Source: Calcarisporiella thermophila CBS 279.70 (lineage: Eukaryota > Fungi > Calcarisporiellomycota). Taken from it: DNA of 64,000 nt. Location of the stretch: the NCBI RefSeq assembly GCF_041956535.1, contig NW_027192191.1, forward strand, positions 193,702 to 257,701, in the 5' to 3' direction. Made by a program: the position numbers and the translations under genes. How positions within the stretch are numbered: the first letter of the stretch is position 1; every line of letters begins with the position of its first letter. A model generated the notes under the pieces. The model was given only the letters and a program-made list of their open reading frames with translations, searched no databases and was not told where the DNA came from. Of the stretch, positions 30,506 through 62,537 are shown piece after piece.

Positions 30506-31795
30506 TCAAGCATCCTCAATTGGCTTGGGATTCCAGATTCGCCGTGAGTTCTCCGGATTAAACAACTCGAACTCCATCTCAAAGCTTTTACGAAAGCACT
30601 CTCTTGCCGGCTGTTCTGGCGATATCAGATGGGCTCTAACCTTTGAATGGAAATGTCCCACCGACAGTGAGGCTCGGCGTATTTGGGCGGGAGGAGTGAG
30701 GGTGGAGGAGGAATAGGAGGAAGAGGGGGGAGGATTGGAAGACGCCGGTGTCAAGAAGCTTGCAGCAATCACCGAGTTAAGAAGAGGCGTGGTAGGAGAG
30801 GGAAGAGGATCGCCCAAAAACCTTGTCTCACGAGGTATCGAGAGACTGGCCTGGTGCTGGATCAAAAAGGTGAGGGCCTGTTGGGACAGCCGGTATTCAG
30901 TGGGAGTGATGCATTCGGGATGGGAAAGCATACCGGGTTGGAATATGGATGCAAGATTGCTTGCGTTCATGCGGTTGTGGCAGCTATTCTTGGCAAAGAA
31001 GGCAAGCAAATCGAGGAGATAGAAGAGCAGATACTGGTGGGGCTGAGGGAGTTGTTCGATAAGGACCTGAAATTCCTTAATACGCTCCTCATCAGATATG
31101 TCCTTCTCTACATAGTATAGAGGGGAGAAAATAAGTAAGGCAAATGCTATTCTAAGGAAGATTCGAATAGATCTCTCAGCTAACTACCCATAGTCTCTCG
31201 GAATGCCTTGTAGTATTCATGGGTGATGACGGGCTCAGGAAGCAAGTTGCAAAAGCGCCGTAGCACACTTGATGCATCATGCACACTATATCCCATCCAA
31301 TTGATGTCGTTGCCGTAGCCTGTGTGATGGGACTCGAAGAGCTCCTGCAAGACACTTATCCGTTTGGCCGAGCCTGAGACCCGGAATATTCCCTCTACGT
31401 TCACGCCTAGGTTTGGATATAATGCAACTTCTAGTTTCTCTAAAGACAGAGTCTGAAGCAGGCTAAAATATACCTTGGCTCCTAAGAAAGGACCCACATT
31501 GGGCTACTACTATGGGGATCTGGCCACAAATCTCTTCGCGATCTTTCAAAAAGGATACCGGTTTACAAGCATAGTTGATGGATTCTATGAGGGGCGCTCC
31601 GAATATGTTGCGAACTAGGGGAAGAGAACTGGGCACCTTCATCTTGTCTGAGTTGAGGGCATGAGTGCGATGGGACTTCCTCGCTTGTGCACCATGGGAA
31701 CACCTAAGGGGAGTGTTGGTAAAGGCTCCTTCGGTTGAGTGACTCTTCCAAAACTTCCATTTGTTTGGGAGTGAGGCAGAGATTGTCATTTGCAT
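30506..31795 (-). CDS. Rho GTPase-activating protein (Sac7-like)
   Basis: IFGAPLIESINYA, IPIVVAQCGSFL, EGIFRVSGSAKRI (Arg finger), VHDASSVLRRFCNLLPEP and NRMNASNLASIFQPGML. The 3' end is uncertain (possible further exon near 30250-30390). Confidence 0.9.
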
Positions 31796-58950: not shown

Positions 58951-59621
58951 TCAAGAACTTCCTCTTCCTCCACAGCACCCAGCCATCTGCTCTTTTGTGG
59001 CTCGCGGTTTCTTTCCTTTATTCATCCGTATGGTTTTATTATCGCCTAATTCGTGCTGGTCCTTATTTAGCCTTAACCCTACAATGACAAAACTGATGAG
59101 ATAGGCGATCCGGATGATATAGGTAGTAAGGCCTAGTATTTACGATAAATCTCTGACTGGTTGTCTCGCTTCACCGCCTGCACCACATTTCTGCGAAGAA
59201 TGGTTGCCGCCTCTTCTGCGGCCTGAATATGCTGTAACGCATAAATGATAAGTACATATGAGGAGAATTAGGGGGGGCTTGGCACAGTGGTCATGTTTAC
59301 AAATCTACCTTTTTGATAACCTCTGGATCCGATTCGTTTTTGTATTTTGAGAATTCCAAGCGTATGCGCTCTCTAGCAGCTATATTAATAAAAGGGATAA
59401 TACTCCTAAATATTTCACTTCATCAATAGCAGCATGCTTCTAGCTTACCCGAATATACAAAAGTATCCCCTTTTAGCAAATCAAGCAATAACAAAACCGA
59501 TATTGTTAACTACATTTACTTTGAAATCAAACAATTCAATATATTATCAACCTTCAAATGTCGAACGAGCCGTTTTCATTAACGTTCTAAATGCCCGCAA
59601 TACATTGTTCCTCTGAGCCAT
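58951..59621 (-). CDS. MZM1: Mitochondrial LYR-family complex III assembly factor Mzm1/LYRM7
   Basis: Five in-phase exons (59621-59552, 59469-59449, 59379-59309, 59231-59144, 59078-58951), 125 aa: MAQRNNVLRAFRTLMKTARSTFEGDTFVYSAARERIRLEF...EAATILRRNVVQAV...YRLRL...ELGDNKTI...GCCGG. Not in the ORF track. Confidence 0.92.
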
Positions 59622-59820
59622 TGTCTTTCTCTCTCTTCTTACAGTAACTCGAAGCCTCTCCAAATTTTGAATTTGTTTTTATGAATGTGGCGCAGAAATT
59701 CTTAACCAGTCATTTACGGAATTTGGAGCACTCCGTGTCAATTCCAGGAAACAAGTATAGGTGTGGTTGACAGCGATAGATGCTCGATAGCTGAATACCC
59801 TAAAATTCGATGCTATCGAC

Positions 59821-62537
59821 ATGAAGTTCTCGCATGCTTTGAAAATAAACTCGGTACCAGACTGGTCCGAACATTATGTCGCGTATCCTTTCTTTTGTCA
59901 ATCCCAGAGTGGATTTAGCTTTATGGCACCTTTATACTGCAGGGCGTTCTCTCAATGGTCATTGTTATCCTTAACATCTCTTTTTCTCCTCTTTTTTTAG
60001 ATACTCCAATCTCAAGAAGATCATATATCAACTAGAAAAAGATGTTCACAACCAGGCGCTGGCCCATACCGACGAAGAGCGTCAGGCACTAATTGCGGGT
60101 AGCGAAAGCCATGTTAATGCACTCTTTGTTCGCGCACTCGATGTGGAGCTCCAGAAATGTGTTAACTTCTACATCAAAAAAGAAAAAGAACTCTACGTGC
60201 AACTCGAAGCACTCATTATGGATGTCGAATACATCGAGGCACAGGGCGAGGCATTGGGGCGAAGGCAATCTATGGCAGCATCAAACTCTCTTGGTGAGAG
60301 AGGTGGGTTCGCTAGGTCCCAGTCACAGGGTCTAAGTAGTAGTCTAGGGTCGGAAGAACACATAGATGACACGCTATCCCTTCAACCAAAATCTGGGAAA
60401 ATTCGTAGGAGTAGTGCGGGAGGAGTAAGAATCAATTTGCCCTCAGGTTACGGGCTTGAGACATCGACAGCTTCACAAGCAGTAGACATACCTCCTAGGG
60501 TACGATATACGGAAGATTCGGACTCTGAAAATGCGCACACACCTCCGGGCGAACTTTCTTTCTATGGCCGCAATCTCTGGGACGATTACGAACGCTATCA
60601 GCAGCGCCTAACATTCAAGCATCGGATCGTAGACCTATTTGTTCTTCTCTCCGAGCTCAAATCGTTTGTCAATCTGAACCTCCAAGCATTTTCCAAGATC
60701 CTTAAAAAATTCGACAAAATCACCGGCTCGAAACTCAAGTCCGTTTATTTAGAACAATCTGTCAACGTTGCATATCCTTTTCGTGCTGAAACAAAAGATC
60801 GGCTGAATGGGCAGGTTCAAAGGCTGGAGCAACTATACGCCCGTATCTGCACTGATAATGACGTGGATCAGGCTATTCGCGAGTTAAAGACACACTTGCG
60901 CGAACACATTGTAATGGAAAGAAACACCGTTTGGAGGGATATGATCAGTTTAGAGCGGCGATCACAAGCCCTAACGCCTCAGGACCCACTCAGTGCCGGA
61001 GCTGCAACCACAAAATTGGTAACGCCAATGGGAATGGTGTCCGTGCCAACTCGATATTTGCGTCAAGTGTTGCTACTTATCGCGTGTACGGCGGTGTTTT
61101 CTGTACTGTTGTATGTGCCGATTTTTAAGAAGGTCGAAGAGAATAATTGCTTCGCCCTACTCGTATTTGCATCGATCCTGTGGGCAACCGAGGTGATACC
61201 TCTCTTTGTTACCTCCCTCCTGATCCCATTCCTCGTAGTCATTCTTCGTGTTATGCGCGATGTAGACGGCAAACACCACTATCGTCTCGACGCGCCAGAA
61301 GCAACAAGGCGCATTTTTGGAGCCATGTTTTCGCCTGTCATTATGTTGCTCTTGGGTGGCTTCGCAATTGCAGCAGCACTGAGCAAACACCACCTCGCCA
61401 AAATGCTAGCCACCTTTGTATTATCGAAAGCAGGGACACGACCCGGGAGTGTTCTCTTTGCAACGATGTTGGTCGCCACATTTTTGAGCATGTGGATTAG
61501 TAACGTTGCGGCCCCTGTTTTGTGCTTTTCAATTATTCAAGTATGGCTTAGAATGCTTCTAAATCTATAATTCCACGTTGGTTTACTAACCGCATCGTTT
61601 CTTTTAATTTTCACAGCCCATATTAAGAACGCTCCCCCCCAACAGTTCCTTTGCCAAGTGTCTTATTCTAGGAATTGCTCTCGCCTCTAATGTCGGCGGA
61701 ATGGCATCTCCAATCAGCTCTCCGCAGAATATAGTTGCCATTGCAAACATGAATCCCCCACCAGGGTGGTTGGAATGGTTCTTTGTCTCAATTCCGCTCT
61801 GTATCACAACTAACCTTTTGATATGGATGCTTCTTTTGTGGAGCTACCGCATCTCGGCGTCCACATCTGTGCACACCGTTCGGCCCACTCAAGATCCGAT
61901 TAATCGGACTCAAGTGTTTGTGATCATGGTGACAATTTTAACCATATTCCTGTGGTGTATTGCGCGAAGATTGGCCCCAGTCTTTGGAGATATGGGTGTA
62001 ATTGCTGTGGTGCCTTTGGTGTGCTTCTTTGGAACCGGTGTTCTAACGAAAGAGGACTTTAACAACTTTTTGTGGACCGTCATCATCCTTGCGATGGGAG
62101 GAATAGCCCTTGGGAAAGCAGTGGACTCGTCTGGGTTGCTGCACACCATAGCGGGCGGAATCAGTGGATTTGTCGGGGGATACGGATCCTTCGCCGTACT
62201 GAGCATTTTTGGAGCGCTTGTACTGGTGGTGGCGACATTTATCTCTCATACAGTTGCCGCACTGATTGTATTGCCTATTGTCGCCGAGGTTGGTACTCGT
62301 ATGCCGGATCCCCATGGACGTCTCCTTGTCATGGGCACCGCCCTTGTTTGCTCCGCGGCAATGGGACTCCCCGTAAGTGGGTTTCCAAATATGAACGCGA
62401 TTATGTTAGAGAATGAGATGGGAAAGGCATATTTATCGACGCGGGATTTCCTGAGAACAGGTGTTCCAGCCTCAGTTTTGGCGACTGCATTGGTCGTGAC
62501 CATGGGATATGGTTTAATGGAACTGCTGGGATTTTAG
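59821..62537 (+). CDS. PHO91: SPX-domain low-affinity phosphate transporter (Pho87/90/91 family, SLC13-like permease)
   Basis: MKFSHALKINSVPDWSEHYVAYSNLKKIIY, SPX lysine cluster FSKILKKFDK, LWATEVIPLFVT, SMWISNVAAPV, ASNVGGMASPISSPQN and SGFPNM. Introns 59883-60000 and about 61541-61616. Confidence 0.93.
59883..60000 (+). other. U12-type (minor spliceosome) GT-AG intron
   Basis: 5' splice site GTATCCTTT (59883-59891), branch site TCCTTAAC (59968-59975), AG at 59999-60000. Removal restores the conserved SPX reading frame. Confidence 0.85.

What the first reader, a model, noticed from the sequence alone, without database searches (positions are those of the whole stretch)
59883..60000. Minor-spliceosome (U12-type) intron interrupting the SPX inositol-phosphate sensor of the phosphate transporter
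Seen: the first intron begins GTATCCTTT and carries TCCTTAAC about 25 nt before the AG. Both match the U11 and U12 consensus exactly, unlike the other introns here (GTRAG/GTAWG-type donors, CTRAC-type branches). It splits the codon just before the conserved Tyr-x3-Lys of the SPX phosphate-binding cluster. Retaining it reads into a TAG at the 3' splice site and removes the whole transporter. It also has a pyrimidine tract after the branch, a hybrid feature. Known: the minor spliceosome is absent from yeasts and most Dikarya but retained in some early-diverging fungi, and minor introns are often rate-limiting. Inference: phosphate transport in this fungus may be gated by minor-spliceosome activity.
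Basis: partly seen in the sequence, partly recalled or inferred. Interest (0 to 1): 0.8.

Follow-up and report, generated by a model that had tools for sequence, protein, structure and literature searches.

The report
Ancient minor-spliceosome intron in phosphate transporter
The first intron of a phosphate-transporter gene in the fungus Calcarisporiella thermophila is a true minor-spliceosome (U12-type) intron inherited from an early fungal ancestor, but nothing shows that it controls phosphate transport.

Summary
Window 59883-60000 is a 118-nt phase-2 intron. It starts with GTATCCTTT and carries TCCTTAAC at 59968-59975, 26 nt before the 3' AG. It splits codon 21 of an 840-aa SPX-CitMHS (Pho87/90/91-type) transporter, just before Tyr22/Lys26. 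If retained, the reading frame stops at TAG 59998-60000.

The genome is Calcarisporiella thermophila. It encodes U11 and U6atac above the Rfam thresholds, full-length U12 and U4atac candidates, and a PDCD7 (U11/U12-59K) homologue. At least 30 other compact introns have the same motifs and open frames on both sides.

Orthologues carry an intron at exactly this position:
- U12-type in Rhizophagus, Geosiphon and Diversispora
- U2-type in Linnemannia, Rhizopus, Phycomyces, Bifiguratus and Basidiobolus
- absent in Umbelopsis, Sorochytrium and Saitoella

So this is an old minor intron that was repeatedly converted or lost.

The "hybrid" pyrimidine tail and the long branch-to-3'ss distance are common among this genome's candidate U12-type introns. 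The gating idea has no support. No RNA data could be obtained, relatives manage without the U12 type, and the genome has two PHO4-type and several Pho84-type phosphate transporters.

This is a new member of a known kind, of low to moderate interest. The scan noted this same stretch from another window, and many other U12 introns in this genome.

The parts
59821..59882 (+). Exon 1 coding part: Met1 to Val20 plus the first two bases (GC) of codon 21
   Evidence: Translation. Identical to the N-terminus of public protein P0001.
59883..60000 (+). Intron 1, 118 nt, phase 2, GT-AG, U12-type
   Evidence: The junctions restore the conserved ...HYVA|YSNLKK... sequence, and the public 840-aa model uses the same junctions.
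59883..59891 (+). U12-type 5' splice site GTATCCTTT
   Evidence: The same nine bases open the orthologous intron in Rhizophagus, Geosiphon and Diversispora.
59968..59975 (+). U12-type branch-point sequence TCCTTAAC. The likely branch A is 59974 (or 59973).
   Evidence: It is complementary to GUAAGGA in the genome's U12 candidate. The duplex is stronger than 493 of 500 shuffles.
59976..59998 (+). Pyrimidine-rich stretch between branch motif and 3' splice site
   Evidence: the 25-nt tail 59976-60000 is 88% C+T. Similar tails occur in other candidate U12-type introns of the genome.
59998..60000 (+). TAG in the exon-1 frame if the intron is retained. Its last two bases are the 3' splice-site AG.
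60001..61540 (+). Exon 2: rest of the SPX domain (Tyr22, Lys26 onward) and the start of the CitMHS/Na_sulph_symp membrane domain
   Evidence: SPX E 2.2e-27, CitMHS 2.2e-12.
61541..61616 (+). Intron 2, 76 nt, U2-type (GTATGG...TACTAAC...CAG), phase 0
   Evidence: The frame continues across it.
61617..62537 (+). Exon 3: rest of the transporter domain, including the stop codon

Best explanation
Window 59883-60000 is a genuine U12-type (minor-spliceosome) GT-AG intron. It is the first intron of the single-copy SPX-CitMHS (Pho87/90/91-type) phosphate transporter gene of Calcarisporiella thermophila. Inferred mechanism: the U11/U12 di-snRNP recognises GTATCCTTT and TCCTTAAC together, and U4atac/U6atac.U5 then carries out splicing at 59882/60001. 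That joins codon 21 and yields the 840-aa protein. The intron is old. The common ancestor of Calcarisporiella and the Glomeromycotina already had a U12-type intron at this exact site. Other lineages converted it to U2-type or deleted it. It most likely persists as an ordinary, constitutively spliced minor intron, one of several dozen in this genome, and not as a dedicated phosphate switch. Shown here: the motifs, the frame, the snRNA and PDCD7 genes, the sister introns and the orthologous introns. Inferred: actual U12-dependent splicing, the branch site, and the lack of regulation.
For: The motifs are exact and correctly placed. The public 840-aa protein VTP21DRAFT_121 uses the same junctions. 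Genome snRNAs: U11 53.1 bits (threshold 39) with a 5' AAAAAGGGC; U6atac 47.6 bits (threshold 33); U12 44.4 bits, full length, with GUAAGGA intact; U4atac 42.9 bits, full length, with an Sm site. U4atac and U6atac pair far better than shuffles, and by my reading they carry a compensatory change in stem II. The PDCD7 (U11/U12-59K) family matches above its cut-off. RTATCCTT...TCCTTRAC occurs 60 times in the genome versus 22 in the reversed control. Of 30 compact candidates fetched, all had at least one acceptor that keeps frames of 15 or more codons open on both sides. At the identical phase-2 position, the intron starts with GTATCCTTT in Rhizophagus irregularis, Geosiphon pyriformis and Diversispora epigaea. 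The first two have a U12-like branch motif 25 and 29 nt from the 3' end. The intron is U2-type in Linnemannia, Rhizopus, Phycomyces, Bifiguratus and Basidiobolus, and absent in Umbelopsis, Sorochytrium and Saitoella. Minor-to-major conversion is taken to be one-directional (PMC10639083).
Against: No transcript evidence exists: no RNA run was listed, so junction use and U12 dependence are inferred. The branch-to-3'ss distance of 26 nt and the pyrimidine tail depart from the mammalian rule (optimum 11-13 nt, no polypyrimidine tract; PMC3584512). The U6atac candidate lacks the canonical AAGGA box that pairs with the 5' splice site. U12 and U4atac score below the Rfam gathering thresholds. The zf-U11-48K family gave no match. 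TCCTTAAC also fits the loose U2 branch consensus.
Confidence: 0.85

Rival explanations
1. One reading: the U12-type intron is a regulatory gate. Slow or conditional minor splicing (for example under phosphate starvation or stress) leaves the intron in, the TAG at 59998-60000 ends translation, and the level of this SPX transporter is set by minor-spliceosome activity.
For: Retention does give a stop after 59 residues. The gene is single-copy in this genome. The U12 type has been kept in Calcarisporiella and three Glomeromycotina genera. Slow minor splicing has been proposed as rate-limiting in animals (PMC3584512).
Against: No expression data exist. Any retained first intron would have the same effect. 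Five lineages run the gene with a U2-type intron at the same site and three with none, so the U12 type is dispensable for the gene. The genome has two PHO4-type and at least two Pho84-type phosphate transporters, so phosphate transport as a whole cannot hinge on this intron. In Rhizophagus, minor splicing was not linked to proliferation, and neutral persistence was proposed (PMC10639083).
Confidence: 0.07
2. The intron looks U12-type but is in practice removed by the major spliceosome, or by either one (a 'hybrid' intron), using the pyrimidine tract and the TTAAC branch with a weak U1 site.
For: The tail is 88% pyrimidine and lies 26 nt from branch motif to AG. TCCTTAAC contains a yTnAy match. 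Introns with mixed features are described (PMC11347168). The U6atac candidate lacks the 5'ss-pairing box.
Against: The donor GTATCC has C at +5 and +6, where intron 2 has G at both (GTATGG) and most U2-type orthologous introns at this site have G at +5. So U1 pairing would be poor (inference). Both minor motifs are exact, and the donor is kept unchanged in four distant lineages, which only U11/U12 recognition explains. Lineages that did switch changed the donor to GTAAG/GTGAG. Pyrimidine tails are common in this genome's AT-AC candidates too, which U1/U2 cannot splice.
Confidence: 0.06
3. A chance motif match, or a gene-model artefact with no real intron or different junctions.
For: Each motif alone is not significantly enriched in the window. 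No RNA evidence exists.
Against: Without removal of exactly 59883-60000 the SPX N-terminus is broken. With it removed, the protein is colinear with more than 100 orthologues. Nine orthologous genes have an intron at the same phase and codon. My estimate of the joint chance of both motifs is about 1e-7 per intron.
Confidence: 0.02

Closest known systems
Minor (U12-type) introns of early-diverging fungi, as catalogued for Rhizophagus irregularis (205) and Basidiobolus meristosporus (249) by Larue & Roy 2023 (PMC10639083) and by Olthof et al. 2024 (PMC11347168)
   Same: Same 5'ss and branch consensus, GT-AG subtype, a phase other than 0, and all four minor snRNAs in the genome. The Rhizophagus orthologue carries the same intron at the same site.
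   Different: The papers read here do not mention Calcarisporiella (0 occurrences). They also do not describe this particular intron or its conversion and loss pattern in the Pho87/90/91 family (no paper combines 'U12-type' and 'SPX domain'). Branch-to-3'ss distances here are longer than the animal optimum.
Saccharomyces cerevisiae Pho87/Pho90 (plasma membrane) and Pho91 (vacuole) SPX-containing low-affinity phosphate transporters (PMC2710535, PMC12668673)
   Same: N-terminal SPX domain with Tyr22/Lys26, and a C-terminal CitMHS/Na_sulph_symp membrane domain. Sources name orthologues 'low-affinity phosphate transporter'.
   Different: The yeast genome has no minor spliceosome (my knowledge; PMC3584512). 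Which yeast paralogue this single-copy gene matches, and its membrane location, were not determined.
Regulated or rate-limiting minor-intron splicing in animals (model of Patel et al. cited in PMC3584512; U6atac stabilisation by stress kinases, from my own knowledge)
   Same: A U12-type intron whose retention would abolish the product.
   Different: No evidence here of slow or conditional splicing. The one fungal test (Rhizophagus, PMC10639083) found no link to cell proliferation.
'Hybrid' and 'minor-like' introns in the taxonomy of Olthof et al. 2024 (PMC11347168)
   Same: Minor-type donor together with a pyrimidine-rich 3' end.
   Different: This intron also has a perfect minor branch motif, so I expect those criteria would bin it as plainly 'minor'. 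It was not scored with their matrices.

Membership tests
U12-type (minor-spliceosome) intron | 5' splice site matching /RTATCCTTT | tested here: met
   GTATCCTTT at 59883-59891.
U12-type (minor-spliceosome) intron | Branch-point sequence TCCTTRAC near the 3' end, complementary to U12 snRNA | tested here: met
   TCCTTAAC at 59968-59975. The genome's U12 candidate keeps GUAAGGA. The duplex beats 493 of 500 shuffles.
U12-type (minor-spliceosome) intron | Short branch-to-3'ss distance (optimum 11-13 nt in mammals) | tested here: inconclusive
   The distance is 26 nt, outside the mammalian optimum (PMC3584512). It lies inside the 11-35 nt spread of 30 other candidates in this genome (3' ends assigned by open frame only) and is close to the orthologous introns (25 and 29 nt).
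U12-type (minor-spliceosome) intron | No distinct polypyrimidine tract | tested here: not met
   The tail is 88% pyrimidine. The same is seen in several AT-AC and GT-AG candidates of this genome, so this looks like a lineage trait and not a feature of this intron alone.
U12-type (minor-spliceosome) intron | GT-AG or AT-AC termini | tested here: met
   GT at 59883-59884 and AG at 59999-60000.
U12-type (minor-spliceosome) intron | Genome encodes U11, U12, U4atac and U6atac | tested here: met
   U11 53.1 bits and U6atac 47.6 bits are above threshold. U12 44.4 and U4atac 42.9 are below threshold but full length, with the functional boxes present. Caveat: U6atac lacks the AAGGA box.
U12-type (minor-spliceosome) intron | Genome encodes minor-spliceosome-specific proteins | tested here: inconclusive
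   PDCD7 (59K) matches at 33.9 bits, above its cut-off of 27, but over the C-terminal 41 positions only. zf-U11-48K gave no match. 65K, 35K, 25K, 31K and 20K were not searched.
U12-type (minor-spliceosome) intron | Removal restores a conserved reading frame, and an orthologous U12-type intron exists elsewhere | tested here: met
   Rhizophagus, Geosiphon and Diversispora have the same position, phase and donor.
U12-type (minor-spliceosome) intron | Splicing shown in RNA and dependent on U12/U6atac; lariat at the predicted A | not testable with these tools
   No RNA run was listed, so read laying could not be used.
Pho87/Pho90/Pho91-type SPX phosphate transporter | N-terminal SPX domain with phosphate-binding-cluster residues Tyr22 and Lys26 | tested here: met
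   Pfam SPX E 2.2e-27 on exon 2. Y22 and K26 are in P0001. Residue numbering is from PMC9911596.
Pho87/Pho90/Pho91-type SPX phosphate transporter | C-terminal CitMHS / Na_sulph_symp membrane domain | tested here: met
   (both exons). Orthologues have the same three Pfam families.
Pho87/Pho90/Pho91-type SPX phosphate transporter | Phosphate transport activity and membrane location | not testable with these tools
   Inferred by homology only.
Regulatory (gating) minor intron | Condition-dependent retention that changes product level | not testable with these tools
   No RNA data.
Regulatory (gating) minor intron | U12 type kept under selection wherever the gene and the minor spliceosome coexist | tested here: not met
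   Basidiobolus is rich in minor introns (PMC10639083) and Phycomyces (~20 there) and Bifiguratus (minor snRNA genes, PMC11347168) still have the machinery, yet all three have a U2-type intron at this site.

The most novel reading that the evidence does not exclude
The U12-type identity of intron 1 is kept in Calcarisporiella and in the arbuscular-mycorrhizal Glomeromycotina because conditional minor splicing tunes the level of this SPX-gated phosphate transporter. That would be a splicing-level layer of phosphate homeostasis in fungi that trade or store phosphate. A separate possibility is that the lineage's U6atac, which lacks the AAGGA box, recognises the 5' splice site in a non-canonical way.
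Probability: 0.06. Interest if true: 0.6.

Novelty: new member of a known kind. Interest (0 to 1): 0.27.

Why it matters
The finding adds Calcarisporiella thermophila to the early-diverging fungi that have a working minor spliceosome. It also gives a clean example of one intron position caught in all three fates across fungi: kept as U12-type, converted to U2-type, and deleted. That is useful for dating and modelling minor-intron loss, and for gene annotation, because two public models of this gene appear to read through intron 1. It does not by itself say anything new about phosphate regulation.

Tried and rejected
- **RNA evidence.** The look-up of sequencing runs listed no RNA run, so read laying was not used and retention could not be measured.
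- **Rfam scan of the window.** Nothing was found. The snRNA genes lie elsewhere in the genome.
- **zf-U11-48K family.** No match. The model has only 25 positions, so this is not evidence of absence.
- **Search for a U6atac copy with the canonical AAGGAGAGA box.** There were no more hits than in the reversed control, and the best loci gave no Rfam match.
- **Literature.** No paper combines 'U12-type' with 'SPX domain'. Calcarisporiella is not mentioned in Larue & Roy 2023.
- **Second U12 intron in the window.** GTATCCTTT at 31550 (-) and ATATCCTTT at 60772 (+, inside exon 2) have no branch motif downstream, so both were rejected.
- **Paralogue check.** The gene is single-copy.
- **Chance and artefact readings.** Rejected on colinearity and on the orthologous introns.
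- **Endogone.** The contig ends inside the intron, so its type cannot be told.
- **Joined CDS.** The spliced model was searched exon by exon by reference. I did not build or submit a joined coding sequence. The full-length protein used is the database's own entry, P0001.

Full report
**Observation.**
- GTATCCTTT lies at 59883-59891, TCCTTAAC at 59968-59975 and AG at 59999-60000. The intron is 118 nt.
- Exon 1 starts at ATG 59821 and ends at 59882 with the first two bases of codon 21, so the intron is phase 2. Exon 2 supplies the third base and then Tyr22-Ser-Asn-Leu-Lys26.
- Read through, the frame runs into TAG 59998-60000 after 59 residues.
- The 25 nt after the branch motif are 88% pyrimidine, and the second A of the motif is 26 nt from the last intron base.
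- Intron 2 (61541-61616) has GTATGG, TACTAAC and CAG, which is an ordinary U2-type intron.

Each motif alone is not rare in the window: RTATCCTTT 3 versus 1.3 expected, and TCCTTRAC 9 versus 4.1. This is the only place where the two occur in intron geometry. From those frequencies I estimate the joint chance at about 1e-7 for an intron whose ends are fixed by the protein.

**The gene.** I searched the model exon by exon, by reference, and did not build a joined sequence.
- Exon 2 carries SPX (E 2.2e-27) and the start of CitMHS/Na_sulph_symp. Exon 3 carries the rest of CitMHS.
- The word search returned a 100%-identical 840-aa public protein, VTP21DRAFT_121 of Calcarisporiella thermophila. Its N-terminus reads ...SEHYVAYSNLKK..., which is exactly the 59882/60001 junction.
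- More than 100 fungal orthologues have the same three domains, and many are named low-affinity phosphate transporter.
- Tyr22 and Lys26 are two of the three residues of the SPX phosphate-binding cluster (PMC9911596).
- The gene is single-copy in this genome.

**The machinery.** The 28-Mb genome gives one hit for each minor snRNA.
- U11 scores 53.1 bits (threshold 39). Its 5' end is AAAAAGGGC and it has an Sm site.
- U6atac scores 47.6 bits (threshold 33).
- U12 scores 44.4 bits, below 53, but it is full length with GUAAGGA, the branch-site partner, intact.
- U4atac scores 42.9 bits, below 53, but it is full length with an Sm site.
- U12 pairs with this intron's branch motif better than 493 of 500 shuffles. 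U4atac and U6atac pair better than 199 of 200 shuffles.
- By my reading, stem II of U4atac/U6atac carries a compensatory change relative to the family consensus.
- The PDCD7 (U11/U12-59K) family matches above its cut-off. The short zf-U11-48K model does not match.

One oddity remains. The U6atac candidate has GUCGAGAGA where the family has AAGGAGAGA, so the usual pairing with UCCUU of the donor is missing. No copy with the canonical box exists in the genome.

**Sister introns.** RTATCCTT followed within 300 nt by TCCTTRAC occurs 60 times in the genome, against 22 for the reversed control.
- I fetched 30 compact cases. In all of them at least one AG or AC acceptor downstream keeps frames of 15 or more codons open on both sides, as expected for real coding introns.
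- Twenty of the 31 (including this one) start with AT.
- Taking the first frame-compatible end, branch-to-3'ss distances run from about 11 to 35 nt with a median near 19. T-rich tails are frequent.

So the 26-nt distance and pyrimidine tail of the phosphate-transporter intron depart from the mammalian rule (optimum 11-13 nt, no polypyrimidine tract; PMC3584512). They are normal for this genome and do not mark a special hybrid.

**Comparative evidence.** I fetched the orthologous genes from 12 other fungi and located the junction by the flanking peptides. Wherever an intron is present and its phase could be determined, it sits at the identical place, phase 2 in codon 21.
- **U12-type.** The intron starts with GTATCCTTT in Rhizophagus irregularis (176 nt, TCCTTAAT 25 nt from the end), Geosiphon pyriformis (126 nt, TTCCTTAG 29 nt from the end) and Diversispora epigaea (170 nt, branch motif degenerate).
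- **U2-type.** Linnemannia elongata (GTAAGA, 398 nt), Rhizopus delemar (GTAAAA), Phycomyces nitens (GTAAGA), Bifiguratus adelaidae (GTGAGT) and Basidiobolus meristosporus (GTAAGG).
- **No intron.** Umbelopsis nana, Sorochytrium milnesiophthora and Saitoella complicata.
- **Undetermined.** The Endogone contig ends inside the intron.

Conversion is taken to run from minor to major only (PMC10639083). The simplest history is therefore a U12-type intron in the common ancestor of Calcarisporiella and the Glomeromycotina, possibly older given the shared position in Basidiobolus. Several independent conversions and deletions followed.

**Mechanism and the gating claim.** The best-supported reading is a constitutively spliced minor intron, recognised by U11/U12 through its two motifs. 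Retention would indeed stop translation, but that is true of any first intron. Four things argue against a dedicated switch.
- Lineages that still have minor introns or minor snRNA genes (Basidiobolus, Phycomyces, Bifiguratus) have a U2-type intron here.
- Three lineages have no intron at this site.
- The genome also holds two PHO4-type and at least two Pho84-type phosphate transporters.
- In Rhizophagus, the only fungus tested, minor splicing was not tied to proliferation, and the authors favour neutral persistence (PMC10639083).

No RNA run could be listed for this organism, so regulation remains untested and has not been disproved. I give it about 7%.

**Comparison with what is known.** Minor introns in early-diverging fungi are established. 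Russell 2006 and Bartschat & Samuelsson 2010 are cited from memory. Larue & Roy 2023 and Olthof et al. 2024 were read here. Public catalogues (introns.info, MIDB) probably already list the Rhizophagus copy. New here are the species, the specific gene, and the three-fate pattern at one site. That makes it a new member of a known kind.

**Limits.**
- There is no transcript or lariat evidence.
- The 3' ends of the sister introns were assigned by open frame only.
- U12 and U4atac are below the Rfam thresholds.
- Only one minor-specific protein family was positive.

**Earlier notes of this scan.** The same stretch was flagged from another window (s1-600881). Many AT-AC U12 introns were flagged elsewhere in this genome (for example s1-588257). 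My genome-wide pattern search agrees with the latter.

Noticed in passing
G000:C2:193832-193964 (+) = L002:1501-1633: The only U6atac candidate (47.6 bits) has GUCGAGAGA in place of the family's AAGGAGAGA box, so the usual pairing with the donor's UCCUU is missing. No canonical copy exists in the genome. Its pairing with U4atac is intact and shows a compensatory change.
   Followed up: partly
Genome-wide; loci L015-L044: Among 31 strict-motif compact U12-type candidates, 20 are AT-AC. That is a much higher share than the roughly one quarter usual in animals (my knowledge). Phases lean to 1, as expected for minor introns.
   Followed up: partly
Loci L015-L044 and window 59976-60000: Candidate U12-type introns of this genome often have T-rich tails and branch-to-3'ss distances up to about 35 nt (median about 19). 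This is longer than the 11-13 nt optimum reported for mammals. The 3' ends were assigned by open frame only.
   Followed up: partly
P0083 (Paraglomus occultum) and P0002 (Endogone sp.) N-termini: These public protein models lack the MKFSH start and seem to translate intron sequence. Possibly gene callers missed a U12-type first intron (in Endogone the contig simply ends inside the intron).
   Followed up: no
G000:C2:1286767-1290865: Two Pho84-type phosphate:H+ symporter genes lie in tandem. Further copies are on C8, C19, C3 and C4, and two PHO4-type genes are on C33 and C44.
   Followed up: no
L010:1-72 (Endogone sp.): The 3' part of the orthologous intron has TCCTAAT about 25 nt from the AG. 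That is the same distance as the U12 branch motif in Calcarisporiella and Rhizophagus, so it is possibly a decayed or variant minor branch site.
   Followed up: no
window 58951-59820: Another first-reader note (s1-619649) proposes an MZM1/LYRM7-like gene sharing the short upstream region with this transporter. I did not examine it.
   Followed up: no
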